DNA of 64,000 bases from Octopus sinensis (taxonomy: Eukaryota), in assembly GCF_006345805.1 (NCBI RefSeq), contig NW_021834150.1, positions 1 through 64,000 on the forward strand. Direction: 5' to 3'. How positions within the stretch are numbered: the first letter of the stretch is position 1; each line of letters opens with the position of its first letter. Below are positions 1-45,007 of the stretch, piece by piece. The notes under the pieces are model-generated. The model saw only the letters and a list, made by a program, of their open reading frames with translations. It was not told the origin of the DNA and ran no database searches. The translations under genes and the position numbers were made by a program.

Positions 1-3000
1 ATTATGTAATAAATTATGTAATAAATTGCGTAATATATTATGCTATTTGGGAGTTCCCTAGATACAGCATACGAGGGTACTTGAGATTATGTAATAAATT
101 GCGTAATATATTATGCAATTTTGGGGGTGCTAAGATGTGAATATACAGGTACTTGAGATTATGTCATAGATTCGTAAACTGCGTAATAAATTGCGTAATA
201 TTTATGCAATTTAGGGAGGTGCCTAGTTTTGTGAATTTTGGGACTTGAGATTATGTAATAATTATGTAATAAATTGCGTAATATTAATGCTATTGGGGGG
301 AGTTCCCAGATTTAACAATTCGAGGGTACTTGAGATGATATGTATAAATTGCGTAATATATTATGCAATTTTGTATGTGCCTAGATGTGAAGATACGAGG
401 AATTGAGATTATGTAATAGATTTCGTAATAAATTGCGTAATTTATTATGCAATTTGGACGTGCCTAGATGTGAAAAGATGGTACTTGAGATTATGTAATA
501 GATGGCGTAATAAATTGCGTATATGTTGTGCAATTTTAGGGAAATGCCTAGTTTTGTGAATTTTGGTACTGGAGATTATGTAATAAATTGCGTAATATAT
601 TATGCAATTTTGGGAGGTGCTAAGATGTGAAGATTGAGGTACTTGAGATTATGTCATAGATTGCGTAATAAACTGCGTAATAATTGCGTAATATTTTATG
701 CAATTTTAGGGAGGTGCCTAATTTTGTGAATTTTGGGGACTTGAGATTATGTAATAATTTATGTAATAAATTGCATATATTAATGCTATTTGGGGAGTTC
801 CCCTAGATTACAATACGAGGGTACTTGAGATTATGTAATAAATTGCGTAATAATTTGCAATTTGAGGCAAGTTTTCCCCTAATTTTAACAGGGTACTTGA
901 GATTATGTAATAGATTGAGTAATAATTGCGTAAATATTATGCAATTTTGAGGAGGTGCTAGTTTTGTGAATTTTGGGTACTTGAGATTATGTAATAAATT
1001 ATATAATAAATTGCGTAATGATTATGCTATTGGGAGTTTCCCTAATTTTGAAGACGAGGGGTAACTTGAGATTACGTAATAGATTGCGTAATAAATTGCG
1101 TAATATTTATGCAATTTAGGGAGGTGCATAGTTTTGTGAATTTTGGGGTACTTGAATATTATGTAATAATTATGTAATAAATTGCGTATGTATAATCCTA
1201 TTTGGGGAGTTCCCTAGATTTAGCAATACGAGGGTACTTGCGATTATGTAATAAATTGCGTAATATATTATGCAATTTTGGGAGGTGCTAAGATGTGAAG
1301 ATACGAAGGTACTTGAGATTATGTCATAGATTGCGTAATAAACTGCGTAATAAATTGCGTAATATTTTATGCAATTTTAGGGAGGTGCCTAGTTTTGTGA
1401 ATTTTGGGGTACTTGAGATTATGTAATAAATTATGTAATAAATTGCGTAATATATAATGCTATTTGGGGAGTTCCCTAGATTTAACAATACGAGGGTACT
1501 TGAGATTATGTAATAAATTGCGTAATATATTATGCAATTTTAGGGAGGTGCATAGTTTTGTGAATTTTGGGGTACTTGAGATTATGTAATAAATTATGTA
1601 ATAAATTGCGTAATGTATAATCCTATTTGGGGAGTTCCCTAGATACAGCAATACGAGGGTACTTGCGATTATGTAATAAATTGCGTAATATATTATGCAA
1701 TTTTGGGAGGTGCTAAGATGTGAAGATACGAAGGTACTTGAGATTATGTCATAGATTGCGTAATAAACTGCGTAATAAATTGCGTAATATATTATGCAAT
1801 TTTAGGGAGGTGCATAGTTTTGTGAATTTTGGGGTACTTGAGATTATGTAATAAATTATGTAATAAATTGCGTAATGTATAATCCTATTTGGGGAGTTCC
1901 CTAGATACAGCAATACGAGGGTACTTGCGATTATGTAATAAATTGCGTAATATATTATGCAATTTTGGGAGGTGCTAAGATGTGAAGATACGAAGGTACT
2001 TGAGATTATGTCATAGATTGCGTAATAAACTGCGTAATATTTTATGCAATTTTAGGGAGGTGCCTAGTTTTGTGAATTTTGGGGTACTTGAGATTATGTA
2101 ATAAATTATGTAATAAATTGCGTAATATATAATGCTATTTGGGGAGTTCCCTAGATTTAACAATTCGAGGGTACTTGAGATTATGTAATAAATTGCGTAA
2201 TATATTATGCAATTTTGTATGTGCGTAGATGTGAAGATACGAGGGTAATTGAGATTATGTAATAGATTGCGTAATAAATTGCGTAATTTATTATGCAATT
2301 TTTGGACGTGCCTAGATGTGAAGAGTCGAGGGTACTTGAGATTATGTCATAGATTGCGTAATAAACTGCGTAATAAATTGCGTAATATTTTATGCAATTT
2401 TAGGGAGGTGCCTAGTTTTGTGAATTTTAGGGTACTTGAGATTATGTAATAAATTATGTAATAAATTGCGTAATATATAATGCTATTTGGGGAGTTCCCT
2501 ACATTTAGCAATACGAGGGTACTTGAGATTATGTTATAGATTGCGTAATAAACTGCGTAATAAATTGCGTAATATTTTATACAATTTTAGGGAGGTGCCT
2601 AATTTTGTGAATTTTGGGGTACTTGAGATTATGTAATAAATTATGTAATAAATTGCATAATGTATAATGCTATTTGGGGAGTTCCCTAGATTTAGCAATA
2701 CGAGGGTACTTGAGATTATGTAATAAATTGCGTAATATATTATGCAATTTGGCGAGTTTCCTAAATTTTACGAGGGTACTTGAGATTATGTAATAGATTG
2801 AGTAATAAATTGCGTAATATATTATGCAATTTTGAGGAGGTGCTTAGTTTTGTGAATTTTGGGGTACTTGAGATTATGTAATAAATTATGTAATAAATTG
2901 CGTAATATATAATGCTATTTGGGGAGTTCCCTAAATTCAAGAATACGAGGGTACTTGAGATTACGTAATAGATTGCGTAATAAATTGCGTAATATATTAT

Positions 3001-4750
3001 GCAATTTTAGGGAGGTGCATAGTTTTGTGAATTTTGGGGTACTTGAGATTATGTAATAAATTATGTAATAAATTGCGTAATGTATAATCCTATTTGGGGA
3101 GTTCCCTAGATACAGCAATACGAGGGTACTTGCGATTATGTAATAAATTGCGTAATATATTATGCAATTTTGGGAGGTGCTAAGATGTGAAGATACGAAG
3201 GTACTTGAGATTATGTCATAGATTGCGTAATAAACTGCGTAATAAATTGCGTAATATTTTATGCAATTTTAGGGAGGTGCCTAGTTTTGTGAATTTTGGG
3301 GTACTTGAGATTATGTAATAAATTATGTAATAAATTGCGTAATATATAATGCTATTTGGGGAGTTCCCTAGATTTAACAATTCGAGGGTACTTGAGATTA
3401 TGTAATAAATTGCGTAATATATTATGCAATTTTGTATGTGCCTAGATGTGAAGATACGAGGGTAATTGAGATTATGTAATAGATTGCGTAATAAATTGCG
3501 TAATTTATTATGCAATTTTTGGACGTGCCTAGATGTGAAGATACGAGGGTACTTGAGATTATGTAATAGATTGCGTAATAAATTGCGTAATATGTTGTGC
3601 AATTTTAGGGAAATGCCTAGTTTTGTGAATTTTGGGGTACTGGAGATTATGTAATAAATTGCGTAATATATTATGCAATTTTGGGAGGTGCTAAGATGTG
3701 AAGAGTTGTGGGTACTTGAGATTATGTCATAGATTGCGTAATAAACTGCGTAATAAATTGCGTAATATTTTATGCAATTTTAGGGAGGTGCCTAGTTTTG
3801 TGAATTTTGGGGTACTTGAGATTATGTAATAAATTATGTAATAAATTGCGTAATATATAATGCTATTTGGGAAGTTCCCTAGATTTAGCAATACGAGGGT
3901 ACTTGAGATTATCTAATAGATTGCGTAATAAACTGCGTAATAAATTGCGTAATATTATATACAATTTTAGGGAGGTGCCTAATTTTGTGAATGTTGGGGT
4001 ACTTGAGATTATGTAATAAATTATGTAATAAATTGCATAATGCTATTTGGGGAGTTCCCTAGATTTAGCAATACGAGGGTACTTGAGATTATGTAATAAA
4101 TTGCGTAATATATTATGCAATTTGGCGAGTTTCCTAAATTTTACGAGGGTACTTGAGATTATGTAATAAATTATGTAATAAATTGCGTAATGTATAATGC
4201 TATTTGGGGAGTTCCCTAGATACAGCAATACGAGGGTACTTGAGATTATGTAATAAATTGCGTAATATATTATGCAATTTGTCGAGTTTCCTAAATTTTA
4301 CGAGGGTAATTGAGATTATGTAATAGATTGCGTAATAAATTGCGTAATATATTATGCAATTTTAGGGAGATGCTTAATTTTGTGAATTTTGGGGTACTTG
4401 AGATTATGTAATAAATTATGTAATAAATTGCGTAATATATAATGCTATTTGAGGAGTTCCCTGGATTTAACAATACGAGGGTACTTGAGATTATGTAATA
4501 GATTGCGTAATAATTTGCGTAATATATTATGCAATTTTAGGAATGTGCCTAGTATTGTGAATTTTGGGGTACTTGATTGGAGAGTTTCCTAAGTTTTACG
4601 AGGGTACTTGAGATTACGTAATAGATTGCGTAATAAATTGCGTAATAAATTGCGTAATATATAATGCAATATTAGGGAGGTGCCTAGTTTTGTGAATTTG
4701 GTGTACTTGAGATTATGTAATAGATTGCGTAATAAATTGCGTACTACATA
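1..4750. repeat. Complex AT-rich satellite, ~60-90-bp monomers with higher-order structure
   Basis: Recurrent core GGGTACTTGAGATTATGTAATAAATTGCGTAATAT(A/T)TTATGCAATT, followed by one of about six related 25-35-bp variable segments. Blocks recur at ~260-bp and ~1.2-kb offsets. The ORFs called here are repeat artefacts. Confidence 0.97.
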
Positions 4751-4759
4751 TGATTCTGT

Positions 4760-6519
4760 GCAAACTCTTCCGGTCCTTATTTATTTGACAAAAAGGGTTT
4801 AGACGAGATGACCTTCTTCCAGTATAGAAGCAACGTCTCCTATGTCGAATAAAACAAAGCAAAAGTTCACTTATATTATGAAACAATTTTTAAAGAAACA
4901 TTACAAATTGATTGAATATAAAATGAAAATGTAATTTTTTAAAAGTTAATTTTTTTAATCATTGACTTTGGAATTGTCTTCCTTTCACTAGATGTGCAAT
5001 TCTCAACGAGAACGGAATGCAGAGAAACTTCTTCCACTACTAGAAATTGTTCCTTGCTAAAAAAACTAGTGAGTAGATATTTTCTTGTTTTTATATTTTT
5101 ATCGAAATCAATTTTAATTGTAACATTATCTCCAATTGTGATATCTTTTTTTCGAAAATTTTCATTTGCGTCTTCTGTAACTTTTCTTTTATACTTTTCA
5201 TTATGAGTTTTTACTTCTAAGGATAATTCCGTTTCTTCCGATTCTGAGTTAATCTCTTCTTCTGCGCCTCCACATGACAAAATATTAAAACCCGTTATTC
5301 CGTAAAATAGACTGGGTAAATAAAAAGAGACTAACCTAAATGGTGACTTTCCAGTTGCGCGATGACAAGTTATGTTGTATTTATACACCACCTTCTGTAG
5401 AATTTCTCTCCACCTTATAGATTCTGTTGCGAACAAAGTCTTCCCCAACCAACGTTTGAGAGTTTGGTTATATCTTTCTATTTGTCCTTGAGATTGTGGG
5501 TGGCTTGGTCTTCCATATATCGGAGTTATTTTCCAATCATCAAGAAGTTTTGAAACTTCTTTGTTGCGGAATTCCTTTCCATTGTCCGAATGAAAATAAA
5601 TTGGAGGACCGACAGTGTGGAATAAACTCTCAATTGCATTATAGATGCTTTGTGATGTTTTATTCTCTAACGCGAATGACCATGCTTTTTGTATGCATCG
5701 ATGACAGTAAGTATCCATTTAAAATTGTCATTATTTGCAGAATACCGCCTTAGATCTATACAGTCGGCGATAAATCTTTCGTATTTTTTTTCCACAGAAA
5801 TCATTCTGATATTTTCACAAGTACTTAAAGAGTTAAATGATTGGCACGGTATGCATTTTGATACAAAATCACGAATTATACATTGTTTAATTCCAATATA
5901 TTTTTGAGAAATTAGATAACACATTTTATTGAACCCAGGATGTCCTTCATTATGTTCATCACAAAGAATAGATTGAATCCTTTCATGTTCAAAAGGACAT
6001 ATAACAATTTTATGTGTTCCTGATTTGGAATAAGAGAATAATTGATCGTCTGCAAAATGAAGAGTTTTACACTTTCTTCGAATTGTTCGCTTTTTGGTTT
6101 CTGTCATTCCAGGTTCATATTTTTTAGACAATAGATATAGTAAAATAGAATCATATTCTCCTTTGCTATTGATGTGTATCGAGCGCACCATGAACAGTTT
6201 AAAAAACGTGAAACTGTTAAATAAAAATTTAAACTTTTAATAATAAAAATCCGGAAAAAAATATAGACATTTTATCCCCAATTCGACTCATTTCCTATCT
6301 AATTCAACAAAAATAAAATTTCAATTTTTTTGCCTACCAGAAAAACATGCGGGTACATTTTACCAATAATTTCATCCGTATCCCCGTATAGGACGTTATT
6401 TAGCCAAAATTAGGCGACACAAATAAAATTTATTCCCAAAATCATAATGATTTGGAGTGATAAATCCGATTTATCACTCCGGACACTTAGAACTGGCCCG
6501 GACGCTATAACTTACGACA
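4760..6519 (-). mobile_element. Ginger-like integrase-only DNA transposon G1 (one terminus visible)
   Basis: HHCC zinc finger plus rve core, with no RT or gag nearby. The right end reads TGTCGTAAG... on the - strand with two CCGGAC sub-repeats. The left boundary is approximate. Confidence 0.7.
4939..6191 (-). pseudogene. Retroviral-type integrase (HHCC + DD35E), frameshifted near 5680, with one 24-nt intron (5312-5335)
   Basis: HNEGH...CIPC, IADCIDLRRY, FHSDNGKEF, QSQGQIERYNQTLK. Removing GTTAGTCTCTTTTTATTTACCCAG gives KSPFSLFYGITGFN. Confidence 0.85.
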
Positions 6520-6529
6520 ATATATATAG

Positions 6530-6670
6530 CAATTTGAAAAGGTCCCTAAATGTGAAGATAAGGGGTACTTGAGATTATGTAATAAATTGTGTAATATATT
6601 ATGCAATTTGGGGAGTTTCCTAAGTTTTACGAGGGTACTTGAGATTATGAAATAAAGTGCGTAATATAAG
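6530..6670. repeat. Detached remnant of the 1-4750 satellite (about 2 monomers)
   Basis: GGGGTACTTGAGATTATGTAATAAATTGTGTAATATATTATGCAATTTGGGAGTTTCCTAAG, same family and orientation. Confidence 0.9.
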
Positions 6671-6679
6671 ATTATAAAC

Positions 6680-8520
6680 ATTTAAATTTAGTCAAATTAT
6701 AACCTTTCTACCTGACCTTGAATCCAGGGGGCCCTTGGTCTTCCTCGTACATGCTTTATAGAAGAGAATAGAATAGTGTTTATTGAGCGAAAAGAAAAAG
6801 AAAAACAAGGAAGAAATCATCGGCGGGGAGATAAAAAAACAAGGCACCGAAGTGTCTCTTTCCATGCGTATCCCCAATACTAGTCATGTTTGACGACAAT
6901 TCTCCAAGACCATCCGGATCGTGGGCACAGAGGATTCTTGTGAGTCTTTTAACCTTCCGTCAAGTTGTACTCCGTAAGCCAATTTCATAGCGAAACGTCT
7001 TGTCTTTTCCAACTGTTCGATCAGGTAGTCACTCTCCTCCGTACCGTACCAGCCCTCGTAACCATATGTGAGGACTGGCTGCACACACGTTTTGTATACG
7101 TAGATGTACGTTTCCGAATCCAGATGGAACCTGGTTAAGCTTTTGAGGATCCTCACACTCCTCTTTCTCTGATTTGCTATATGCTCTACGTACGAGCCAC
7201 GACAGTTGATGGTTGCTCCCAGGTAAGAAAGATTTTTGCTTTTCGGGAGATCCATCACATAGCTACTCATCGCATATGCACACGACTCCGCATAGCGACT
7301 CCCTCTCCGCAACCATGAAATGGTGCTCTTCTCCGGTGCTAGGGTCAAACCCTTCTCTATAGTCCACATCTTTAGCGTTGCAATGTATGATTTCAGTCTT
7401 CTCCAAGACTGCGATATCCTTTTCGAGGTATCCATGACCAGGATATCGTCAGCATAGATAACGAGCTTGCCAGTACGTGTCGACGGCAGAGGAATGTCCG
7501 CCAAGAAGAGGTTGAACAGAAGTGGACTCAAGATAGATCCCTGCGGGACTCCCCTTCTAAGTTCCACACACCCCGATAGGCGGTTTCCATAGCGGACAAA
7601 TGATTGTCTTCGTACATGCTTTATGTTGTACTTTTCACAAAGCCGAATCATATGGGCATTACAAAATTCCTTGCCGTTGTCCGTATGCAGTATTAATGGA
7701 GGCCCCACGTAGAAAAAACTTTTTGAAATAGAGATGTAATTTCAGCGGAGCTTTTTGAATAAGCTAACTCGACCATGGCATATTTCGAAAAAGAATCAAC
7801 AATAACAAGAATCTAATCGTTTAAGAGAAGGCAAATACCCAATTAAATGAGTCATTAATTTCCGAATATCTTCGGAGATCGACCAGATCGGCGATATACC
7901 GGTCTCTACTTCTTGCAATTATCGGCGTAATAGGTGGCTTTTTTGCTAATGCCTTTTTAGACTAAAAATATAGGAAAAATCGTTACCTGACAAGAGACAC
8001 ATTGGGAAATGACTTGATTTATTTCGTTTCTTGTAATTCCATAGTAGCGTGATCTGAGCTTAGAAAATAAGCGATCTCTACCAAAGTGATTAATATTGTC
8101 TTCAACCTATTGATATTGTATTCAAATACATACCTCAACAAATTTGCGTCTCAATTCAGTTCCATCCGTACAAAAAAACGTAATTTTAGATTATTGTGCG
8201 AAATGAATGGCGTTTCGCCTTCAAAAACAAATGACATAACCAATTTTGCTAGCCTAAATCGTTTCATCCGAGACGATGAATCCTCCGAAAGAAAATCACA
8301 GGGGTTTTCTTGAAATTCTTTGATTTTCTGTAGGGATTCTTTTGTTATTTGCACTAAACGCATTATACACAGTTGATAAAATGATTAAAATTTATTCATA
8401 ATTTATTAATATTTATAGATATTTTTTTTCAAATGAAATTATTATTGTTTAACGTATTTTTAATTTTTTTTGTTTACATGCGTAACGCTTCCGGCGCCGT
8501 AACGCTTCCGGACTGCGACA
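6680..8520 (-). mobile_element. Ginger-like integrase transposon G2, spliced integrase gene interrupted by a LINE
   Basis: ATG at 8363. Introns 8107-8133 (27 nt), 7962-7986 (25 nt) and 7813-7838 (26 nt) restore ...CVSCQ/SKK...IADLVDLRRY...NW/ILVIVDSFSK...HTDNGKEF. The frame resumes past the LINE as IKHVRGRPRAPWIQGQVER. The terminus TGTCGCAGTCCGGAAGCG is at 8520. Two single-T homopolymer frameshifts. Confidence 0.85.
6760..7609 (-). mobile_element. 5'-truncated LINE (RT C-terminal half + 3' UTR) with 15-bp TSD
   Basis: RRGVPQGSILSPLLFN and YADD motifs, and a (TTCTA)n-like tail. TSD TCGTACATGCTTTAT at 6745-6759 and 7610-7624. Confidence 0.92.
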
Positions 8521-10689: not shown

Positions 10690-11800
10690 TATGTATAACG
10701 GGAAGGAACCTCCGTAACCCGACTAGAAAAATCCCAAGACAATTGCTTAAGAAGTAAATTATAAATGGGATCAATGCCTCAATTAAAGAATATATTGATT
10801 CTGTGCACAATTTGAATATCAACGATATTACTGATATCATCTATGCAGGACAGTGCACATATGAGAGCCTTACCCAGATAATTAGAACTAAGAGTAATTG
10901 GGAAGAATTAATGAAGAGCAAACTCATTAAACTAAAACAGCAGCTTGAACAAATTAAAACTGCTAGTGAATTAAAAGAAAAGAAACAATTTGATGAAGAA
11001 ACGCGTAATACGTTGTGCTCAATTTTAATGAGGACGAATGCCTCCCTTTCTGGAGAAAAATTTGGGATCAACATGAATCTAAGAATAGCAATTTTCTGAT
11101 CACCACAAGAGTGACTGGATCAGAGAATATTCGTGCAGAATTTACGGATGAGGCAATTATTAAAATTATCAAGATGCTTCCTAATTGGAGAGCATGCGGG
11201 TGTGACGGAGCCTACAATTTCTTTATCAACAATTTTACATCAATTCATGGACATCTTTGTAATGAGATTCGCAAGATTATAAATAAAGACTTTACCCCTG
11301 ATGATTGGTTTTATACGGGAATCACATATCTGATCCCTAAGAAGGACGTATGTGACTCCCCCAAGGATTTGAGGCCAATCACATGTATGCCTAATTTATA
11401 TAGGTTGACGACGAAATGTGTAAACATAAAGTTTTCAGAGTATATTAATTCTTTTGGATTAATAAGTGACAATCAACTGGGCACAAGAAGAATGTGCCAG
11501 GGTGCAAAAGAACAAGCCATAATCAACCAGTGTATTAACCAAGAGAATGCCAATAAATTATGTTCATCATGATTTCTTAGACCATTTGTTACAAAAGTCT
11601 GGACTACCTTATTGGATTGTCTGCTTTATTCAGAGTCTTATTAAGGAATGAAAAATACGATTGACTTTTGAAAATAAATCATTGGGTGAAGTAAAAATAA
11701 GAAGAGAAATTTTGCAAGGAAACTTTTTGTCGCCACAGATCTTTGTGTTGGTATTTGACTTTTTGAGTCGATGTTAAATGGAAAATACCCGAAAGTAACA
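10690..11800 (+). mobile_element. RLE-type (R4/NeSL-like) non-LTR RT remnant
   Basis: ACGCDG, TYLIPKK, RPITCM, NQLGTRRMCQGAKEQ; multiple stops and frameshifts. Confidence 0.85.
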
Positions 11801-11809
11801 ATGGCTAAT

Positions 11810-12300
11810 ACCCAGAAATGCCGCCTTGTATGATATTGTCAAGCGCGCGCTTTACTCCGCTGGAATCCCTTCGATCCTGGAGCCGGTTAAGTTAGACAGT
11901 GGTGACGGAAAACGTCCTGATGTGTCCACGCAATTCCCGTTCAAGGGGGGACTCGCTCTCGTTTGGAACGTCACCTGTGTCGACTCGTTTTCCTCGTCAT
12001 CTCTCATCGACTCTGCCTCCCGCCCTGGCTCAGCGTCCGCACATGCTGAAACAAAAAAAATCACATTGTATGCCTCATTGGAGAACACCAGCCTTTTCGT
12101 CCCTCTGGCTTTCGAAACGAGTGGGATAATCGGCCCAAAAGCTCTGGAGTTCCTTTCGGAAATCGGCTTGATGATCTCAAGGAAGAGTCACGAGAGACGT
12201 GAGTCTAGCTGGCTTTCTCGCGATATTGCGCGGAAACTGCCTGTCTATTCGCTCGTCCTCTCAATCAAAGAATTAACGTGGATCATTGAATTATTATTAT
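11810..12300 (+). mobile_element. CRE/HERO-like non-LTR 3' fragment (restriction-like endonuclease)
   Basis: DGKRPDV, LVWNVTC, FVPLAFETSG; (TTA)n end. Confidence 0.85.
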
Positions 12301-12639
12301 TTTATGAAAACTTTTCATAATTGGCCACAAATTTTGATTTCAAATGCCATTAAATGCCATTTTCAGTTAATCAACTATTTGGTTGGGTGACGTCACTGAG
12401 TAGTTGTTGCCTAACCTAGTTAAGCGCTAGTCTTGTTTTGGTAAGGTGACCACTTCTATTTAACTGACTAGTTAAGATAGGTTGCCTAGTCTAGTTAAGC
12501 GGCATAGATCACACTCTTGTCGAGAATTGCCATCAAATCATCGTTGCTCACTTACCGGGACTTGTGAAATGGTTCTCGGCTGGATATTTATCGGTATTAG
12601 GGTACATGAGATTTCAAATTGACAGAATATTTCATTTTT

Positions 12640-13151: not shown

Positions 13152-14609
13152 ATGGGTAAGAAAAACAGCAAAAATAGAGGAAAAGGAATAGAAAAGACGA
13201 TAATAAAAACCGAAAAAAACGCATCCAAAAAAGAAAAGAAATTGTGTGCCCAATCAGGAGAGGTTTTGTTAACACCTATACTAAAAGAAATTCATCGACG
13301 ACATGTTATCAGAATTTCTCCTCATAAACTCGAGAAAATCGAGCACAGTCTTTGAGAACTGTTCCCCTCCACGTCCTCGGTCGTGCTTTTCCCTCGTCGC
13401 CCATCCGAAATGGGACCTCATTTTTCTTTTTGGAGGAGAGTGGTATTCTAAGCACGCGGTCGAATTCCTCGACGACCTTTTTTGCTTCCATGTCATAAAG
13501 AAACAATGGACTCAAATTGTCGCCCCCAAAGGCCCTCTCCCACGCTCGTCCCATCAGGTAACCTTTTTTAATAGTTCAGATGGTCTGCTCTGGGGACAGT
13601 TTATGGGTCTTTGGCGGGGAGTTTATCAACCCCACCGAATCACAGTTCCACCACTTTTCTGATCTCTGGAAGTTTTCGATTCCCTCAAAAACTTGGGAGG
13701 AGGTCAAATTCCCAGGAGGCCCTTTGGCCAGGAGTGGCCATAAAATGACCTTTTGGGAGAGAAAAAATTGTCTTTTAATTTTTGGCGGTTTTCAAATAAC
13801 AAATTCGTTTAATTTCCGTCGGGAATTTCTAATTTTAGTGTGTCTCGGTGGTTCAATGATCTCTTTGCGTTCGACGTTGTGCATAATATGTGGATTCCGT
13901 TAGTTTCGAAGGGAGACTGTCCCTCACCCCGATCGGGAGTGGCTTTCAGTTGTTTATCGACTACTGAGGACCGCTTTTTCATATTTGGGGGATACTCAGA
14001 CGGGAATGTTCTTGATGACTTGTTCTCACTCACTCTCCAACTTGGTAAACTCGACTGTTTCTATCCCCACAGTTCCTGGTTGTAAAGTCATTGCGACTTA
14101 CTCTCGGATATATATAGAAGGGAAGAATAACCCAAGTCCTCGGTCAGCATTTGGTTTTTGTTCTATTGGTCCTGGACGTGTTGCCGTCTTTGGCGGTTCG
14201 GGGAGGGAGGTGAGTGGTAATCCGCAACCAAAGTAGGACGGAGAACAATCAGAGACGTACGAAGATCTGTTCGTGTTAGATGCAGTTCGAAAGAAGTACT
14301 TTCTTCCGACAGTTTGCCCACAAGTGCATCCTCGGCCACGAGAAAATTGTTCGCTGTGTTATAAAAGCGGATTTATTTATTTGTTTGGAGGTTGCCTTGG
14401 TTGATTCAGAGTAGGCTATGTCGAGTCGAGGACAGGATGGGAGATGTTTGGGGACTTTTATTGCATTGATGCATTTAAGCTCAACTCCTGGATTTTGTTA
14501 GGGACACAGCCGGATGATGCAATGGTTGGTATGTTTGTCTTATGTTAAGATCGAGTTGAGCCAGTCTGACGAATCATCCGAAGAGTCATCTATGGACATT
14601 TCACAATAA
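13152..14609 (+). CDS. KLHDC4: Kelch domain-containing protein 4; 8 exons, introns 13263-13287, 13558-13579, 13807-13838, 14045-14072, 14210-14236, 14391-14414, 14525-14549
   Basis: MGKK...KGIEKTIIKTEK N-terminus; kelch repeats LFGGEWY, PRSSHQ, LWVFGGEF..PTESQFHHFSDLW, RSGHKM, PSPRSG; acidic C-terminus. Each GT-AG removal restores the frame. Confidence 0.93.
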
Positions 14610-15140: not shown

Positions 15141-16007
15141 TGTCACAGTCCGATAAAGAAACACGCCGTTAATGAAACGCCAACATCAAATTGACAAAAA
15201 ATCATATCGAAAAAAATATAAACTAATACAAATCGTCATTGGAAATGATTAATTAGTATAGATTTTGACCGTCCATAGAATGGACACGCCGTTAAATGGA
15301 CACTAGGTGCTTTGAATAGGGCAACAAGGTAATGTAAAAAAATATATTTATAAAATGATTTAAAATTTTAACATGATTTAAAATTGAAATAACTTAAATT
15401 TTCCATTGAATCCCATAAAATAATTTATAAGTAGACCTTTATAGAAAAAGTAAAATCAATGAATACTGAACGCTAATTTGGTTTAGGTTGTGAGGGGGGG
15501 TAATAATTTGACAGATCTCATTGCTATTTCTCGTTTCAATCTCTAAAATTAGGTCTTCTAATTTTTTTTTTATTTACAAAAACAACTAAGACCGAAAATC
15601 GTTAAGTTCCAGCGGCGAGGACGCAGTGTGCGTTGCCCCGAACAATGGCCAGGCCGATGCGCTGGCGGAACCAGAGGCCCTCTCTCGAGTCCTTGAGCCT
15701 CCTCCCGATGGACTTCCCGACCTCTTTGAGGAACGAGTCAGTCTCCTTTCCTGCAACTCCAGCGGTCTCCAGGGCGATTGCCGTAACGCGGTAGCGGTCT
15801 GCGAGCGAAGAATATTTGTGTATTTTGATCTTTTCGGCGTGGTTTGCAGCCGAACAAGGGTTTGCCGCAGAAGAATGGATCCTCGATTTCGAAAAAGTAT
15901 CCACAACGGTCTTCTAATCACAAATGAACTGTGCAGACAAAATCAATTTTTTTCTAATTTGATGTTGGCGTTTCATTAACGGCGTGTTTCATAAACCGAC
16001 TGTGACA
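15141..16007. mobile_element. Non-autonomous TGT...ACA element (Ginger-type MITE) with ~55-bp TIRs and 5-bp TSD
   Basis: TIR TGTCACAGTC...GAAACACGCCGTTAATGAAACGCCAACATCAAATT at both ends; AAATA at 15136-15140 and 16008-16012. Confidence 0.88.
15575..15915 (-). mobile_element. CRE/HERO-like LINE 3' fragment nested in the MITE
   Basis: AIALETAG...QRIGLAIVRGNA, then a short UTR and A-rich tail; near-identical to 29320-29512. Confidence 0.85.
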
Positions 16008-19313: not shown

Positions 19314-20170
19314 ATCGACACTGTTCTTTCTCAAATAAATATGATCGACACTGTTCTTTCTCAAATAAACGAACAGAGGAAATCATTTGCTGTGGATGAT
19401 TGCGTCGTCGTATGGGAAAAGCTGGGATTGCCATCTGATGTGACCTGCCAATCGGAGTGGACGTCGAAAGTCCACGCCAATACGTTTTCATGCCTAAAGG
19501 AAACCATGGACCAGAGAAGGTTGGCTTGTTTACAAGCGGGCAGCCAGCCCCTAAGCGGCGCGTGGCTAAACTGTTGCCCTTGTAATACAACTGGCTGCCT
19601 TCTTAATGATGAAGCCGTAAGAATTGGAGTTTGTCTGCGCCTCGGTCTACGCGTTTATGAAAAACACCAATGCCGGTGCGGCGTGTGGACTGACGAGTTT
19701 GGATATCACTCCCTCTCATGTCGAAACGGAATTGGACGTTCCTCACGGCATTCCTAACTGAACCAGATCGTCTGTCGATCTCTTCGAACTGCTGGATTCT
19801 ACACACAATTGGAACCTGGAGGGATTTTCGTAGAGGACGGCAGAAGACCCGATGGGATGACCACATTTTCGTTCCAGAGGGGAAAGTGTCTGGTTTGGGA
19901 CGTCACGTGTGTGAACTCCTTCTCCAATCAGAATATCAAATTATGCATCGAGAATCCTGGAGCCCAGTCTGAACGGGCTGAGAAGAGAAAAGCTGAGAAA
20001 TACGCTGGAATTGGGAATGGGAGAGTGTTTGTCCCCCTGGCAGTTGAGACGTCAGGAATACAGGGGCCTTCTACTCGGACCCTACTCCAGCGCATTGCCT
20101 CATTAATCGAAAGAGTTACCGGCGACCCGTGTGAGCACCGGTATTTAATCGAAAGAATATCGTTATTGTG
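19314..20170 (+). mobile_element. CRE/HERO-like LINE 3' part (zinc knuckle + RLE), frameshifted
   Basis: SGAWLN, CRCG...HSLSC, DGRRPDG, LVWDVTC, FVPLAVETSG. Confidence 0.88.
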
Positions 20171-20560
20171 CGACCAACGTTCGTTTAATCTGTGGACCCT
20201 TTGTTGGACCTCCTCGATTCACCTCCTGTTGGACCACGATAGCCACGGTGCCCATCATCCGCAGACGTATGAAATGGACGGTTCAAAGTATCGTCGGTAA
20301 ATATACGCCAATACCGAATGGGAACTGTTTTCTATAACGGATAGGCTTCTGAGCACGTTCAGTGTATTAAGAATAGGAAACGCTATTGCTTAAAGCCAAA
20401 CAAGAGTTTATGTAGTTTCTAAATTCGGAAGCAAAACACACCAAGCGGATCCCGCTTGTCATCCTGACTTCACAATCCTTTTTATCTAACTCAGAAACTT
20501 AGCGATCACTAACTCAAATTTTCAAATCAAGAAGGTCCTAACTCCCTACCCTCCCAAAAT
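20170..20560 (-). mobile_element. Degenerate LINE RT C-terminal remnant
   Basis: ISYVCG*WAPWLS...IEEVQQRVHRL resembles the post-RT region of APE LINEs. Confidence 0.4.
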
Positions 20561-20644: not shown

Positions 20645-21270
20645 AGGAATGACTCTATACCTAAGAGCGTGGCTCAATGCATGTCCTATCCCTTCAGTCG
20701 GAAACAAACTGGACGACGAGACATTGCGAATTGCGATCTCCTTACTCCTTTGCATGAAGATCTGTCGCCAGCACCGCTGTAGTTGCGAGGCTTCCGTTGA
20801 CGAATTCGGACGGCATGCTCTCTCATGCAGACGCAGTGCAGGCCGGTTTCCAAGACATCATGCAATGAACCTAATTGTCAAGAACGCTTTGCATGCAGCT
20901 GGTTTCCCGGCACAGCTGGAGCCTCCTGGTCTCATCCGCACAGACGGAAAAAGGCCTGATGGGATAACAATTTTTCCGTACACCAACGGGAAGTGCCTTG
21001 TTTGGGACTGCGCCTGCACCGACACCTTCTCAGAGACAAACCTGATCGCCTCAGCCTCCTTTCCAGGATATGCTTCACAGAACTACGAAAAAATTAAAAA
21101 ATTAAAATATTCAGAGCTCAAGGACAGGTTCATAGTGCAACCGATTATTGTGGAGTCATCTGGAGTCTTCGGTCCGGAATCAATCTCTTTCATTAGGAAA
21201 CTTGGATCCTTGATCTCGGTTCAGACGAAAGATAGAAGGGAGACCGAATGGCTGTTTCAACAAATTTATT
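20645..21270 (+). mobile_element. CRE/HERO-like LINE 3' part (zinc knuckle + RLE)
   Basis: AWLNACP, CSC...HALSC...RH, DGKRPDG, LVWDCACTDT. Confidence 0.9.
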
Positions 21271-21336
21271 TTGGTTATCTAAGTTTTCCAATTTGAAAAA
21301 ATAATAAGTATAATTGATCAAATCTATATTTCAGAA

Positions 21337-22466
21337 ATGGTTTTACTCAACTTTACTAAAGATGAACTTGAAGTAATCAAAAATATTCAAATAGATGTTT
21401 TTTATATGGACCGATTGCAGATTTAGTGGATTTAAGAAGGTATGCTATCCTTAATAGCGATAATGGATGGGTTATTTCTTTTTGTATAAATTGTAGTTGG
21501 TTGTGGTTATAGACTCATTTTCTAAATTCGCAGTTGTAAAATTTGCCAGGCGGAAATCAGCGGAGGAAATTACTAGAAAATTAAAGAATATTTTTTACAT
21601 GATTGGTCCCCCATTTATTCTACAGACGGATAATGGGAAAGAATTTAAGAACAAATGTATGGAAACAATGTGTAATGATCTGAAAATCATACATATAAGT
21701 GGACGCCCTAAGGCACCATGGATTCAGGGTCGTGTAGAAAGGCAAGTTATTTGTAAATTTATCTTTAGATTCAATCAATCGATCAAAAGGTGGATTAGCT
21801 CAACTAGTGCCTCAAATGGGTCTTTTGGAAGCTATAAAGACTTCTATCAAGAAATCGTTTATAAATATAACATTGCGAAGCATGAAACGACCAAGAGGAC
21901 ACCTTTCGAAATTTTTATGCGAGGAAATCATTTAATCCCGGAGGAAATAAGATCGGCGTTATTGTCATTCGATGGAAATGAAGCGGTTAAATCAAGCCAA
22001 TCGGAGATAATTGGATCTGATTATTTCGAAAACGAGGACGATTGTTTGAATCAACAAAGTGTGTATGAAAGCCATGTTTTCGCCGGAGAAAAAATGAAAA
22101 GGAGGCGGAAATGGAAATTTAATGAAGATTTAGCCGTAGGAGATAATGTCCTACTGAGACATGATATTGATGCAAATCCAAATAATTTTTTATATAATAA
22201 AAATTCATGAATTTTTAATATTTGTTTTTAAATGGTAGACCTAAAAAATTGTATAATTATAATAAAAAACGTTATTGATTCGGAAAAATTGGTGATGCCG
22301 GTTTTTGCCGACTCTTGGAAAAATTCATTCAATCAAAAAATTGATAAAAAATTGAATAAATCGACTTAATTTCATTATCAAATTATTTTTAATTAATTAT
22401 CAGGTTATTTTCGTTTGATCTTAATATGTCACGAGCCTAGGTTGTTACCGAGCCTAGGTCGTTACA
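21337..22466 (+). mobile_element. Ginger-like integrase transposon G3, internally deleted, introns 21471-21496 (GT-AG) and 21742-21768 (GC-AG)
   Basis: IADLVDLRRY...GW/LVVVIDSFSK, LQTDNGKEF, IQGRVER/FNQSIK. Ends in CGAGCCTAGG repeats and GTTACA. Confidence 0.85.
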
Positions 22467-25125: not shown

Positions 25126-25129
25126 TCCC

Positions 25130-25995
25130 AGTTTTGCTAGATCTCCAAAATCTTCTATTCCTTATTTTGAGTTATTATACAAACAATACTACAATTGAAC
25201 ACGCATGTGCGTCGTGTATCACGTTACTGCCAATATGCGCACAAAACAAACTGGAAGTTGTACAGAACCAGTGCTTACGGATTTTACTGAAACGTGATAA
25301 ATACACTCAGCGTCAAAAAACTAATGGACCATCTTACAGAAAGACAACACATCTTCTTAACGATGGCAAGCTCCATTCCAAGCTGTAAACAAATTCCAAT
25401 GCGACTAAGACAGGCACAATTAATACTTGCTAACTGAAACTGGTCGGCGTGTAAGTGAATATCTTCAAGTATGTGCGAACAATATACAGTATATTATCCC
25501 AGTTGTACATTATCCCAGTTCCTTTGAACAGATGGAATGTCCGGGACTTTAAGCCCCTGAGAAACTTACTCGTTGGTTTAATATCGATTAATCGAAGGGA
25601 AGTCCAGCAGCCTGGCGGATTGCCAAACTGATATTTTTTGGTGCTGATTATTTAAAAATATTTAATTTTTTAATTTGAATGATGATTAGTAATTCTATCA
25701 AAAAATTTTGGGATCATATCGATACCCAAAGGAAGAGAGCCATTAAAATCCTACGTATTCTGATCAGATTTCATCTGAGTCCAAAAACGTACATCTACAT
25801 ATACAAGACATGTGTACAACGACAGGTGAAAAAGTTTGTCTAATCAACAAACTCGAGAAAACGAGGCGTTAAGTTGAGTTGGCCATTAAGTTGGCCTACG
25901 GTCTCGATCTCAAAGAAAAATTGAATAACTTTTATGAATCCTGCGTCCCCAAAATACAGTCCGTCCTTGAGAAGGCGCGGTTGTTTTTGTAGTGG
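25130..25995 (+). mobile_element. Two LINE RT C-terminal remnants (25130-25440 and 25700-25995)
   Basis: KLEVVQNQCLR; RKRAIKILR..RFHL..TYIYIYKTCVQ..LEKTRR..KLAYG, homologous to the 6760-7609 family. Confidence 0.7.
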
Positions 25996-28132: not shown

Positions 28133-29294
28133 TGTCACCGTCCAGACCGGCCGGGGCGCCAGATCGGTCAGGTCAATTATCTAAATACAAAACAAATATT
28201 TTTCCTACAAAACATTTCATTGCAAAAAAATATTGATAATAAAAAAATAAAATCTTATTAATAAAAAAGTTCTAAAAAGTTGAAAAGATTAGCATTAATC
28301 AATGGTTTTAGTTGAATTAACTCGAGACACCCTCGAAAAAATTAGGGAGTATTTGGAATCAGGCCACCTTGATGATTCCTTGAGTTCGGAAGAAAGGGCA
28401 CGAATACGGAGATATGCCAAAAAATTTAGTTTCAAGGAGAACAACACCTACATTTCTAAAAATGGCTCAAAGTTGCGTTTTTTTTGTATCGAAGACACTG
28501 AACTTAAGTTAAAATTTATTGAAGTAGTGTTTTTGTTTATTTAAATTAGGCTCCACGAGTGCATCAAATGGAAATTTTGGATGCTATAAAACATGCGTGA
28601 AGAAAATAGCAATGACGAAGTTGAAAGTGGCGATGAAATTTTAATACGCCATGATGGGGATGCAAACCCGGGTTATAGAAAATACCCATTATACGACGAG
28701 ATATCTGCACAAAAATATATTGTGAAAAATAGGGATCGAGAACTCGTAACGATAATTAATGAAGAGGATGAAAAAGATCAAAGGATACATATTAACAGAG
28801 TAAAATAACTTTAACTGCAAATATTCATGGGGTTCGTTCTGTGTTTTTTCTCGTGTCATATTTACTTAATTGTGAAATAATTGTGCCATTGTTACAAATT
28901 CGACGCGGCCGAAGGCCGCATAGGGAAAAATATTCACATTTAATCATCCGGCCGTAGGCCGGTTTGTATTTTAGAGTTTTAATGATAAAAATAGAAATTT
29001 ACAACATTTTTAAAAATTAAAAATGGATTTTTCTAATAAACTTTATTGTTGAGAATTGTTTGGCTAACCTTGGTTAAAGCGTTTTTAAATAAAATGCAAA
29101 ATCAATACGGTAATTATCCGGAAATGACTGGATGTTGGTTTTTTATGAACTCAGTAACTTCAATATTTTGACAAAAATAATATTAAAATCAACAAAAGAA
29201 TGAACAGAAAAAGAAAATAACTTCCGAAAGGTAGTTTTTATTAAAAATTTTATACATAACCGATCTGGCGCCCCGACCTATCTGGACGGTGACA
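28133..29294 (+). mobile_element. Ginger-like transposon G4, internally deleted, both TIRs present
   Basis: 36-bp imperfect TIR TGTCACCGTCCAGA..GG.CGGGGCGCCAGATCGGT. The N-terminus is homologous to G2, with a 26-nt intron (28524-28549) at the same site. The C-terminus is homologous to G3. No clean TSD. Confidence 0.88.
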
Positions 29295-29319: not shown

Positions 29320-29512
29320 ACACCGAAAATCGTTAAGTTCCATTGGCGAGGACGCAGTGTGCGTTGCCCCGAACAATGGCCAGGCCGATGCGCTGGCGGA
29401 ACCAGAGGCTCTCTCTCGAGTCCTTGAGCCTCCTCCCGATGGACTGCTCGACCTCTTTGAGGAACGAGTCAGTCTCCTTTCCTGCAACTCCAGCGGTCTC
29501 CAGGGCGATTGC
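29320..29512 (-). mobile_element. CRE/HERO-like LINE short 3' fragment
   Basis: Near-identical to 15595-15783. Confidence 0.85.
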
Positions 29513-29580
29513 CGCTGGGAACGAATGGTTCTTAATTGAGTGCAGCTGGGAACGAATGGTTCTTATTTCGAAGACAACTA

Positions 29581-39105: not shown

Positions 39106-39372
39106 TTAAACTAATGTATGTAAAGCAGAAGAACTGATGGCGATCCAGTTTCCCCTCACTATTGCTTGGGACACGTTCTGGAGGAGCCATCTCGTCTCCA
39201 GAGGATTGTGCGTTCTCAGGGTCTTGAGACGTCCAATACACATGAGGAAGCGCAACGACTCCTTCCCAATCGATCCCAGGGTCTCGACAGCAACCGGCCG
39301 GAAAACGAAACGATCGTTGAGCCCCTCATATTTCCTCTTCTTGATGTCCTCTGCTCTATCCGCAGCACGCAA
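39106..39372 (-). mobile_element. CRE/HERO-like LINE 3' fragment
   Basis: KKRKY..L...FRPVAVETLG...QAIVRGN. Confidence 0.85.
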
Positions 39373-44364: not shown

Positions 44365-44706
44365 TTACTTGAGTTTTTCGTAAAGATAGAATTTATTTTC
44401 GGTATGCCTCTTTTCCTAAACTTTTTTATTATTCAAAAATAATTTTTTAAATAGATAACCGAAGGAGGAAAAACGAAGCTGAAGAAAAAACGGTCAGCTT
44501 AATAAGGTAATTAATTAAATCTTTTTTGTGTGTCGCTTTTTTGTGTGTCGCTTTCTTGCCTGCCGAATTTCCGCCTGCCGCATCTCCCCCTGCCCCATTT
44601 CCGCCAGTAAAAAACAAAAAAATAAAAAAAGAAAAAAAAGGAAATTACAAAGGAAAAATGAAAAAATTAAATATAAAAAAAATAAACCACAAAAAATGAA
44701 AAAAAG

Positions 44707-45007
44707 TTTGCAATGACAATAAACAAGGCCCAGGGACAGTCATTAAAGGTAGTTGGGTTATTTTTAGAGACTGAGTGCTTTTCACATGGACAGCTGTATG
44801 TGGGATGCTCGAGGGTAGGCAGAAGAGAAAATTTATTCATATATGCCAAGGAAGGACGGACGACAAACATCGTTTATCAACAGGCGATAGAATAGGGTTA
44901 CATTAAACCAGGTAGTTTTATACATCTACATAAACTTATAGTTGTTTGATGAAACAGGCCCTCCGCAGGAGCTAGGTCGCGGTGAGCGAAGCGAGCTGCC
45001 GAGCTAG
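44707..45007 (+). mobile_element. Helitron 3' end, second copy
   Basis: Near-identical to 41945-42245, in the opposite orientation. Confidence 0.93.

What the first reader, a model, noticed from the sequence alone, without database searches (positions are those of the whole stretch)
6680..8520. Integrase-only DNA transposons carry host-type 24-27-nt spliceosomal introns at shared positions
G2 becomes one continuous integrase frame only after removing three tiny GT-AG introns (27, 25, 26 nt), apart from two single-T homopolymer slips. G4 has an intron at the same FVE/FIE site (28524-28549). G3 has one at the same W/(I,L)LV site (21471-21496). G2 and G3 both break at VER (donor at 6703; intron 21742-21768). 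The intron sequences differ but positions and lengths are kept. G1, a different subfamily, has its own 24-nt intron. Introns in Ginger transposons are established, but a family whose introns have converged on the host's extreme micro-intron size looks like a long-resident lineage adapted to a miniaturised spliceosome. It may be an undescribed clade.
Basis: partly seen in the sequence, partly recalled or inferred. Interest (0 to 1): 0.8.

Follow-up and report, generated by a model that had tools for sequence, protein, structure and literature searches.

The report
Integrase transposons with host-sized micro-introns
Four decayed copies of a cut-and-paste transposon that uses a retrovirus-type integrase carry 24-27-base introns, the same size class as those of a normal host gene 5 kb away; this is a tidy example of a mobile element shaped by its host's splicing machinery, not a new kind of element.

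Summary
Six micro-introns are confirmed: G1 24 nt; G2 27, 25 and 26 nt; G3 26 and 27 nt. Removing them makes each copy align without gaps to a profile of intronless relatives. G2 and G3 share two intron positions in the same phase, although their DNA no longer aligns.

Corrections:
- G2 is not one continuous frame. It also holds a nested non-LTR retrotransposon fragment and is cut off at its 3' side.
- The G3 intron after VER is GC-AG, not GT-AG.
- The acceptor of the G4 'intron' cannot be verified, because G4 is internally deleted next to it.

New evidence:
- A host KLHDC4 gene (13152-14609) has seven GT-AG introns of 22-32 nt, so 'host-type' is shown directly.
- G4 has 41-nt terminal inverted repeats (TGTCA...TGACA).
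- Relatives are 1.7-2.0-kb TIR elements with a single intronless integrase ORF. The named ones are microsporidian.
- No LTR-type gag, protease or RT accompanies any copy.

These are Ginger-like DNA transposons. The host is probably a dicyemid. Whether the introns are spliced is inferred, not shown. Interest is moderate.

The parts
6669..8520 (-). G2: 3'-truncated copy of the integrase transposon. Its 5' terminus reads TGTCGCAG... in element orientation.
   Evidence: The 5' end has a GC-rich stretch of about 45 nt with two direct 14-nt repeats, starting TGTCG. The low-coordinate side abuts a partial satellite unit at 6519-6668. No second arm is present in the window.
6703..8363 (-). G2 integrase (transposase) gene, broken: 2 frameshifts, 1 nested retrotransposon insertion and loss of everything after the VER donor.
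   Evidence: Pfam finds Integrase_H2C2 and rve pieces. Profile hits cover positions 9-242 in several frames.
8107..8133 (-). G2 intron 1: 27 nt, GT-AG, phase 0, after ..KFVE.
   Evidence: A 30-nt alternative scores about the same. The donor position matches the G4 donor after ..KFIE.
7962..7986 (-). G2 intron 2: 25 nt, GT-AG, phase 0, directly after the second Cys pair of the H2C2 finger.
   Evidence: It is uniquely the best splice pair, by 10 bits.
7813..7838 (-). G2 intron 3: 26 nt, GT-AG, phase 0, between W and ILVIVD (just before the first catalytic Asp).
   Evidence: It has the same position and phase as G3 21471-21496.
6884..7708 (-). Open frame that runs from integrase codons into a nested, 5'-truncated non-LTR (LINE-type) reverse-transcriptase fragment.
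   Evidence: Pfam RVT_1, E 1.4e-14. It is 37% identical to the APE+RT LINE ORF at 22727-25171. It is flanked by a 15-bp direct duplication. It is a separate element, not part of G2.
4942..6191 (-). G1 integrase gene, a different subfamily, broken by 1 frameshift. It is otherwise full length (profile positions 1-420).
   Evidence: The element ends are not settled. Candidate 5' termini ..CGACA end at 6519 or 6419, and no matching 3' arm was found.
5312..5335 (-). G1 intron: 24 nt, GT-AG, phase 2.
   Evidence: Removing it closes an 8-residue insertion against the profile and raises the score from 245.4 to 257.1 bits.
21414..22207 (+). G3 integrase gene remnant. It is 5'-truncated (starts at profile position 142), and its C-terminal roughly 45 codons are unrecognisable after a premature stop.
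   Evidence: A candidate 3' element end ..GTTACA lies at 22466 but is unconfirmed.
21471..21496 (+). G3 intron: 26 nt, GT-AG, phase 0, between W and LVVVID.
21742..21768 (+). G3 intron: 27 nt, GC-AG, phase 2, inside the R codon of VER (just after the catalytic Glu).
   Evidence: G2 has a GT donor at the identical codon position (6703).
28133..29294 (+). G4: complete-ended but internally deleted (non-autonomous) copy, 1162 bp.
   Evidence: The terminal inverted repeats are 28133-28173 and 29254-29294, 36 of 41 positions identical, reading TGTCACC...GGTGACA. The flanks ATTT/TTTT give an imperfect 4-5-bp duplication.
28302..28805 (+). G4 gene remnant: an N-terminal piece, a short middle piece and a C-terminal piece, left by 2 internal deletions and not in one frame.
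   Evidence: Profile positions 9-76 and 351-417 are covered. The middle piece matches G3. A GT donor after ..KFIE lies at 28524, and the acceptor cannot be verified.
13152..14609 (+). Host gene, a KLHDC4 orthologue. It is not part of the elements and serves as the yardstick for host introns.
   Evidence: It has 8 exons and 7 GT-AG introns: 13263-13287 (25), 13558-13579 (22), 13807-13838 (32), 14045-14072 (28), 14210-14236 (27), 14391-14414 (24) and 14525-14549 (25). The spliced 424-aa product is colinear with animal KLHDC4.

Best explanation
WHAT IT IS
G1-G4 are four dead copies of small cut-and-paste DNA transposons of the Ginger kind. They belong to at least two subfamilies: G1, and G2/G3/G4.

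HOW IT WORKS
- An intact element would be about 1.7-2 kb, bounded by roughly 40-nt terminal inverted repeats that begin 5'-TGTC(A/G) and end (C/T)GACA-3'.
- It would carry one gene for a 400-450-aa Ty3/Gypsy-type integrase, with an N-terminal extension, an H2C2 zinc finger, a DDE core and a small C-terminal domain.
- By analogy with retroviral and Ty3 integrases, this protein binds the repeats, exposes the CA-3' ends and joins them to target DNA with a stagger of a few bases. One relative shows a perfect 5-bp duplication.
- In this host the gene is split by spliceosomal micro-introns: one in the G1 lineage, and at least four within the first 240 or so codons in the G2/G3/G4 lineage.
- The host spliceosome must remove these introns before an integrase can be made.
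- Their length (24-27 nt) and weak signals (little beyond GT/GC...AG) match the introns of a neighbouring host gene (22-32 nt).

SHOWN VERSUS INFERRED
- Shown: the intron structure, the shared positions, the terminal repeats, the lack of retroelement genes, the intronless relatives and the host intron size.
- Inferred: that the introns are spliced, the transposition chemistry, and that the introns were gained inside this host lineage.
For: INTEGRASE IDENTITY
- Pfam finds H2C2 and rve in the window copies and in 20 of 20 relatives.
- The family profile aligns to Ty3 integrase (7q5b) over profile positions 32-419, and to PFV integrase over 69-312.

INTRONS
- Six GT/GC-AG segments of 24-27 nt were found. 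Removing them gives gapless alignment to a profile built from intronless relatives.
- Two positions are shared in phase between G2 and G3, although their DNA no longer aligns.

DNA-TRANSPOSON NATURE
- G4 has terminal repeats with 36 of 41 positions identical.
- The G2 5' end starts TGTCG.
- L002 (Dictyocoela muelleri) is a 1726-bp element with 42-nt repeats starting TGTCGCATGCC, and a single 425-aa ORF.
- L007 is a 2000-bp element with 39-nt repeats and a perfect 5-bp duplication TTGTA.
- L003 is 1970 bp, TGTCG...CGACA, and lies next to a host P4-ATPase gene.
- G4 is an internally deleted derivative, as is typical of DNA transposons.

NO RETROELEMENT PARTNERS
- The only RT within G2 is a nested non-LTR fragment with its own 15-bp duplication.
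- Frames upstream of G3 hold no RT, protease or gag.
- In a neighbour-joining tree of the core, 110 integrase-only proteins plus G1 and G3 form a clade free of the 12 polyprotein-length hits.

HOST INTRON SIZE
- KLHDC4 at 13152-14609 has seven introns of 22-32 nt, mean 26.1, against 25.8 for the elements.

RELATIVES ARE INTRONLESS
- They are called as single uninterrupted ORFs of 392-537 aa.
Against: - There is no transcript evidence. The 24-nt G1 intron and the 27-nt G3 intron are in frame and stop-free, so retaining them would only add 8-9 residues.
- No copy in the window is intact.
- Only G4 shows both ends. The ends of G1 and the 3' end of G3 are unresolved.
- The G4 target duplication is imperfect, and L002 shows none.
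- The G3 VER intron has a GC donor, which could be a rare functional class or a mutated donor in a dead copy.
- The protein database favours intronless relatives, because intron-bearing ones would be called only as fragments. 'All relatives are intronless' is therefore biased.
- The host species is not identified.
Confidence: 0.8

Rival explanations
1. The integrases are the integrase part of LTR retrotransposons (Ty3/Gypsy-like) or of Polinton/Maverick elements whose other genes lie nearby or have been lost.
For: - The protein is homologous to Ty3 integrase over its whole length.
- An RT domain lies inside the G2 coordinates.
- Polyprotein-length proteins appear among the more distant hits.
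Against: - The RT in G2 is of the non-LTR type: it is 37% identical to an APE+RT LINE in the window, 5'-truncated, and carries its own 15-bp duplication.
- No gag, protease, RNase H, DNA polymerase B or capsid domains were found on the element strand.
- G4 and the relatives L002 and L007 are bounded by short inverted repeats, not long direct ones, and have room for one gene only.
- Polintons are reported to lack the HHCC finger (PMC10045372), which is present here.
- The window copies fall in a clade free of polyproteins.
Confidence: 0.04
2. They are host genes domesticated from an integrase (like vertebrate GIN1/GIN2), which would explain an intron density like that of host genes.
For: - The G2/G3 lineage has about one intron per 60 codons, the same density as KLHDC4 in this window.
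- Ginger1-derived host genes with conserved introns are known (PMC2836005).
Against: - There are four copies in 64 kb, from at least two subfamilies, and all are broken (frameshifts, truncations, deletions, a nested insertion).
- They lie among satellites and other transposons.
- G4 keeps inverted terminal repeats around a gutted gene.
- The G2 5' end has the same TGTCG terminus as mobile relatives.
Confidence: 0.05
3. The 'introns' are not introns. They are small insertions or junk accumulated in pseudogenes, and GT...AG is coincidence.
For: - All copies are dead, so nothing constrains them now.
- Two of the six segments are in frame and stop-free.
- One segment starts GC.
- Site 1 of G2 has an equally good 30-nt alternative.
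Against: - All six segments fall within 24-27 nt, and five of six start GT. All end AG, with exact restoration of frame and gapless alignment.
- The two 25/26-nt segments of G2 shift the frame exactly as removal requires.
- Two positions are shared in phase between copies too diverged to align as DNA.
- The true frameshifts in the same copies cannot be bridged in this way.
- The neighbouring host gene has the same class of intron.
Confidence: 0.05
4. The introns are real but are not a sign of adaptation or of gain in this host. They were inherited from an intron-bearing animal Ginger ancestor and simply shrank with all other introns of the genome, and the intronless relatives lost theirs.
For: - Ginger1 families of Hydra have 1-4 introns, three of them conserved in GIN1/GIN2 (PMC2836005).
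- Host introns in dicyemids keep ancestral positions while being very short (PMC13644364).
- The database is biased towards intronless relatives.
Against: - G1 and G3 each sit closer to intronless relatives than to each other, in 80 and 91 of 100 bootstrap replicates, and share no intron position.
- More than 60 relatives at 30-50% identity are uninterrupted.
Confidence: 0.3

Closest known systems
Ginger1 DNA transposons (Bao, Kapitonov & Jurka 2010, PMC2836005)
   Same: - Cut-and-paste elements with terminal inverted repeats and TGTNR termini.
- The transposase corresponds to a whole Gypsy-type integrase (H2C2, DDE, C-terminal module).
- Some families have 1-4 GT-AG introns.
   Different: - No OTU or Ulp1 protease domain.
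- Flanks are AT-rich, not CCGG/CCGT.
- A relative has a 5-bp rather than a 4-bp duplication.
- Elements are smaller (1.7-2.0 kb).
- Introns are 24-27 nt.
- The YPYY motif was not assessed.
Ginger2/TDD DNA transposons (PMC2836005; PMC10045372)
   Same: - Integrase-only TIR elements with TGTNR termini.
- 4- or 5-bp duplications in AT-rich targets.
   Different: - Ginger2 is described as lacking the GPY/F C-terminal module, whereas this family's profile aligns to Ty3 integrase through its C-terminal domain.
- No phylogeny against curated Ginger2 proteins could be made here.
Ty3/Gypsy LTR-retrotransposon integrase (PDB 7q5b)
   Same: Homologous over the whole protein, and the same TG...CA end chemistry is expected.
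   Different: No LTRs, gag, protease or RT-RNase H. The element has inverted, not direct, terminal repeats.
Other DNA transposons whose transposase genes carry spliceosomal introns: Tc1-like elements of molluscs (bioRxiv 10.1101/656579), CACTA (PMC4158355), and the P element (own knowledge)
   Same: The transposase can only be made after splicing by the host. Intron positions are conserved within lineages.
   Different: Different superfamilies. Introns there are of ordinary length.
Ultra-short host introns of dicyemids and myxobolid myxozoans (PMC13644364; PMC6736024)
   Same: Same length class, and the same reduced signals (GT(a)...AG with no clear polypyrimidine tract), as seen in the KLHDC4 gene of this window.
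   Different: Those reports concern host genes. Transposon genes were not discussed in the parts read.

Membership tests
Ginger-type (integrase-encoding cut-and-paste) DNA transposons | Transposase is a Gypsy-like integrase with an H2C2 zinc finger and a DDE core | tested here: met
   Pfam finds Integrase_H2C2 and rve in G1-G3 and in 19-20 of 20 relatives. H, H, C, C, D, D and E columns are invariant in alignment A1. The family aligns to Ty3 and PFV integrases.
Ginger-type (integrase-encoding cut-and-paste) DNA transposons | Terminal inverted repeats with 5'-TGTNR termini | tested here: met
   G4 reads TGTCA...TGACA with 36 of 41 positions identical. The G2 5' end is TGTCG. Relatives L002, L003 and L007 read TGTCG...CGACA. 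The ends of G1 and G3 are unresolved.
Ginger-type (integrase-encoding cut-and-paste) DNA transposons | No RT, RNase H, protease or gag in the element | tested here: met
   Complete relatives of 1.7-2.0 kb hold one ORF. The RT in G2 is a nested non-LTR fragment.
Ginger-type (integrase-encoding cut-and-paste) DNA transposons | Short target-site duplication (4 bp; 5 bp in TDD) | tested here: inconclusive
   L007 has a perfect 5-bp TTGTA. The G4 flanks match at 3 of 4 to 3 of 5 positions. L002 shows none.
Ginger1 subgroup | CCGG/CCGT target; C-terminal OTU or Ulp1 domain; YPYY and GPY/F motifs | tested here: not met
   Flanks are AT-rich. No OTU or Ulp1 is found in 20 relatives. The C-terminal domain aligns to that of Ty3 integrase but is not detected by any Pfam SH3-type model. 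YPYY was not assessed.
Ginger2/TDD subgroup | AT-rich target, 4-5-bp duplication, integrase without a GPY/F module; placement by phylogeny | tested here: inconclusive
   Target and duplication fit. A Ty3-like C-terminal domain is present. No curated Ginger2 sequences were available for a tree.
Ty3/Gypsy LTR retrotransposon | Long direct terminal repeats and gag-protease-RT-RNase H upstream of the integrase | tested here: not met
   no direct repeats flank any copy, and no such domains lie on the element strand.
Polinton/Maverick | DNA polymerase B, packaging ATPase and capsid genes; integrase without an HHCC finger (PMC10045372) | tested here: not met
   None of these domains was found. The H2C2 finger is present.
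Spliceosomal introns of the host's micro-intron class | GT(GC)-AG borders, length within the host's range, and removal restores the reading frame and colinearity with intronless homologues | tested here: met
   for the elements. The host range of 22-32 nt comes from KLHDC4.
Spliceosomal introns of the host's micro-intron class | Absent from mature transcripts | not testable with these tools
   No transcript data are held.
Domesticated integrase gene (GIN1-like) | Single intact copy without terminal repeats, conserved in synteny | tested here: not met
   There are four broken copies in 64 kb, and G4 has terminal repeats. Synteny is not testable.

The most novel reading that the evidence does not exclude
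Two separate lineages of this transposon family, G1 and G2/G3/G4, each lie closer to intronless relatives in other organisms than to each other. The reading is that each gained spliceosomal introns de novo after entering a micro-intron animal, probably a dicyemid, and that the G2/G3/G4 lineage reached host-gene intron density. Because introns of 24-27 nt are below the size that ordinary spliceosomes handle, such elements would be 'splice-locked' to this host. They would then be a dated record of recent intron gain in an animal lineage otherwise known only for intron shrinkage.
Probability: 0.3. Interest if true: 0.6.

Novelty: new member of a known kind. Interest (0 to 1): 0.42.

Why it matters
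- It shows that the extreme intron size of this genome applies to a selfish gene as well as to host genes. That argues for a genome-wide cause (spliceosome limits or deletion bias) rather than selection on particular genes.
- The many diverged, dated transposon copies could serve as a clock for how fast introns are gained, lost or shrunk in such a genome.
- It extends Ginger-like elements to a micro-intron animal, and links them to a compact integrase-only family that is common in microsporidia and in environmental assemblies.
- Practical point: gene finders and repeat annotators that forbid introns under 30 nt will miss or fragment these genes.

Tried and rejected
- Exact look-ups of window proteins (the G1 ORF and the hAT ORF) found nothing on record, so the source assembly could not be named.
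- tRNA and Rfam scans of the window found nothing.
- Searches for second terminal arms of G1, G2 and G3 found none.
- I first placed a G1 5' terminus next to the satellite. I then found that satellite similarity may extend over it, so the G1 ends are left open.
- DNA alignment between G1, G2, G3 and G4 gives almost nothing: only 46 nt between G4 and G3. No DNA-level family comparison was therefore possible.
- Names for the closest relatives were mostly absent from the collections.
- The repeated ORF next to G3 (20646-21293) has no Pfam or PDB match. My reading of it as a restriction-like endonuclease domain of a non-LTR element rests on motif recall only.
- Considered and rejected: ciliate or microsporidian host. 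The standard code gives long ORFs, and the introns lack the strong microsporidian branch-site motif. KLHDC4 is animal, with its best hits in molluscs.
- A myxobolid host is not excluded, but fits less well on GC content and on the best hits.
- Assignment to Ginger1 or Ginger2 by tree was not attempted. Only published consensus sequences would have served as references, and I did not write those out.
Full report
SETTING

The window is AT-rich eukaryotic DNA read in the standard code, and it consists mostly of repeats.
- A satellite array occupies 1-4750, with a partial unit at 6519-6668. A second satellite of about 95 bp lies at 42.8-46.4 kb and 61.6-63.7 kb.
- Other mobile elements are present: an APE+RT LINE ORF (22727-25171), an uninterrupted hAT transposase ORF (49477-51105) and a Tc1/mariner ORF (34685-35857).
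- No tRNA and no Rfam family was found.

THE OBSERVATION

On the minus strand of 6680-8520, Pfam finds pieces of an H2C2 zinc finger and an rve integrase core in different frames.

- Each begins GT and ends AG.
- Joining the exons as they stand gives a stop-free 139-codon reading.
- Against a profile built from 20 uninterrupted relatives (alignment A1), this reading aligns as one stretch to positions 64-196, with no gap at any junction.
- I scored every GT/GC...AG pair within 40 nt of each site. The proposed pair is uniquely best at the second and third sites, by 10 and 7 bits. At the first site a 30-nt alternative is as good.

The other copies give the following.
- G3 has a 26-nt GT-AG segment (21471-21496) at the same W|(I/L)xV junction and phase.
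- G3 also has a 27-nt segment (21742-21768) that splits the R codon of VER in phase 2.
- G2 has a GT donor at the identical codon position (6703).
- G1 has a 24-nt GT-AG segment (5312-5335). Removing it closes an 8-residue insertion and adds 11.7 bits.
- G2, G3 and G4 no longer align as DNA. Shared positions in phase are therefore inherited features of an old common ancestor, not copies of one recent insertion.

- G2 is not one frame after intron removal. Besides two frameshifts, its coding region is interrupted by about 0.85 kb of a 5'-truncated reverse-transcriptase fragment.
  - The fragment matches RVT_1 at E 1.4e-14.
  - It is 37% identical to the APE+RT LINE at 22727-25171.
  - It is flanked by a 15-bp direct duplication.
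This RT is a nested non-LTR insertion, not a partner gene.
- G2 also ends inside the intron after VER, where the satellite begins.
- The G3 VER intron starts GC.
- G4 is an internally deleted copy with two deletions, and one lies so close to the FIE donor that the acceptor and the length of that 'intron' cannot be verified. Only the donor position is comparable with G2.

WHAT THE ELEMENTS ARE

G4 is bounded by inverted repeats (28133-28173 and 29254-29294) that are identical at 36 of 41 positions and read TGTCACC...GGTGACA. The 5' end of G2 (8520) starts TGTCGCAG and holds two direct 14-nt repeats.

An exhaustive protein search with a G1 piece returned 17 proteins below 1e-30 and 903 below 1e-10. 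Many of the best are 390-460-aa proteins that match from about residue 170 onwards, that is, integrase-only proteins of the same build. A profile search gave 64 more.

The named relatives are microsporidian: Dictyocoela muelleri, Enteropsectra breve and Hamiltosporidium tvaerminnensis. All are called as single uninterrupted ORFs. Their loci show the element structure.
- L002 (Dictyocoela) is 1726 bp, with 42-nt inverted repeats starting TGTCGCATGCC and one 425-aa ORF.
- L007 is 2000 bp, with 39-nt inverted repeats starting TGTCGTGCC and a perfect 5-bp duplication TTGTA.
- L003 is 1970 bp, TGTCG...CGACA, and lies beside a host P4-ATPase gene.

Further points on identity:
- Pfam finds only H2C2 and rve in all 20 relatives. 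There is no RT, protease, OTU or Ulp1.
- The family profile aligns to Ty3 integrase over positions 32-419, so the protein is a complete Ty3/Gypsy-type integrase.
- In a neighbour-joining tree of 203 core columns, 110 integrase-only proteins together with G1 and G3 form a clade that excludes all 12 polyprotein-length hits.

These are therefore Ginger-like cut-and-paste transposons in the sense of Bao et al. (PMC2836005).

Assignment within Ginger is open.
- The whole-integrase build recalls Ginger1.
- The missing protease domain, the AT-rich flanks and the 5-bp duplication recall Ginger2/TDD.

THE HOST'S INTRONS

Scanning the remaining open segments found Kelch repeats in three frames at 13.3-14.2 kb.
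- The gene (13152-14609, + strand) has eight exons and seven GT-AG introns of 25, 22, 32, 28, 27, 24 and 25 nt.
- The spliced 424-aa product is colinear with animal KLHDC4. The alignment favours the 24-nt over a 15-nt choice at the sixth intron.
- The best hits are molluscs and other spiralians at 34-38% identity.
- Mean intron length is 26.1 nt for the host gene and 25.8 nt for the elements. In both sets the signals are little more than GT...AG.

'Host-type' is thus shown within the window.

Among animals, introns under 30 nt are reported only from myxobolid myxozoans and Dicyema japonicum (PMC13644364). Several features fit a dicyemid better than Henneguya salminicola (29% GC): the spiralian best hits, a window GC near 35%, the repeat richness and about seven introns per gene. 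For comparison, D. japonicum has 36.7% GC, 49% repeats and 6.2 introns per gene (PMC6736024). The species is not established.

HISTORY OF THE INTRONS

- G1 lacks all the G2/G3 introns, and G2/G3 lack the G1 intron.
- G1 groups with a set of about 43 relatives that includes the Dictyocoela and Hamiltosporidium proteins. G3 groups elsewhere.
- In 80 and 91 of 100 bootstrap replicates respectively, each sits in a clade of at least five other proteins that excludes the other.
- The simplest reading is two lineages that acquired introns separately.
- The alternative is inheritance from an intron-bearing animal Ginger, with loss elsewhere. It cannot be excluded, because the protein collections would record intron-bearing relatives only as fragments.
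- The hAT, Tc1 and LINE ORFs of the window are uninterrupted, so introns are not a general feature of mobile elements here.

STATE OF THE COPIES (counts only)

- G1: one frameshift; ends unresolved.
- G2: two frameshifts, one nested insertion and a 3' truncation.
- G3: a 5' truncation and a premature stop, with the last roughly 45 codons unrecognisable.
- G4: two internal deletions.
- If the assembly comes from long reads, the single frameshift of G1 could be an assembly error. Only the reads can tell.

VERDICT

The finding is real and the main interpretation holds.
- Known already: Ginger-type transposons, introns in Ginger1 transposases, intron-bearing transposases in other superfamilies (bioRxiv 10.1101/656579; PMC4158355), and the host's micro-introns.
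- New here: the combination of these in one family, the number and conservation of micro-introns in it, and its link to a compact family otherwise seen without introns.
- Splicing, intron gain within this host and adaptation remain inferences.

Noticed in passing
window 13152-14609 (+): Host KLHDC4 orthologue with seven GT-AG introns of 22-32 nt. It is the only clear host gene found in the window and sits between transposon remnants.
   Followed up: yes
window 1-4750 and 6519-6668: Satellite array with a unit of roughly 80-90 bp. A partial unit separates G1 from the truncated end of G2, and similarity may run a few bases into what looks like a G1 terminus.
   Followed up: partly
window 42834-46446, 61624-62228, 63138-63735: A second satellite (unit about 95 bp) in arrays of both orientations, 90-96% identical between arrays.
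   Followed up: no
window 11799-12317, 19314-20297, 20646-21293 (+); 15605-15913, 29336-29593, 39109-39372 (-); 51656-51946 (+): At least seven copies of a Cys/His-rich ORF of about 200 aa with no Pfam or PDB match. One follows a weak RT hit at 11015-11569. It is possibly the C-terminal nuclease domain of a 5'-truncating non-LTR family. Two copies lie directly upstream of G3.
   Followed up: partly
window 49477-51105 (+): Uninterrupted 542-aa hAT transposase ORF (BED finger, DUF659, hAT dimerisation domain). It has no introns.
   Followed up: no
window 34685-35857 (-) and 29581-30362 (-): Tc1/mariner transposase ORF (391 aa, DDE_3) and a second, degraded copy 82-97% identical in pieces.
   Followed up: no
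window 57270-58313 (+), 41090-41710 (-), 58611-59154 (+): Repeated ORF family (60% identity between copies) with no Pfam match.
   Followed up: no
window 22427-22466: Just 3' of G3 lies a forward-oriented TGTCACGAGCC... stretch with two direct 17-nt repeats, built like the G2 terminal repeat. It may be the G3 end or the start of another copy.
   Followed up: partly
L001 12-70: In a forest-soil metagenome contig, the end of one family copy (...ACGACA) and the start of the next (TGTCGTATCC...) are separated by only 5 nt (ATAAA). This could be tandem copies sharing one duplication or a joined-ends form. A second family ORF follows at 1646-2650.
   Followed up: no
window 53498-53587 (+): Weak 15-residue match to the DNGKEF region of the integrase profile (E 0.0097). 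It may be a fragment of another integrase or chance.
   Followed up: no
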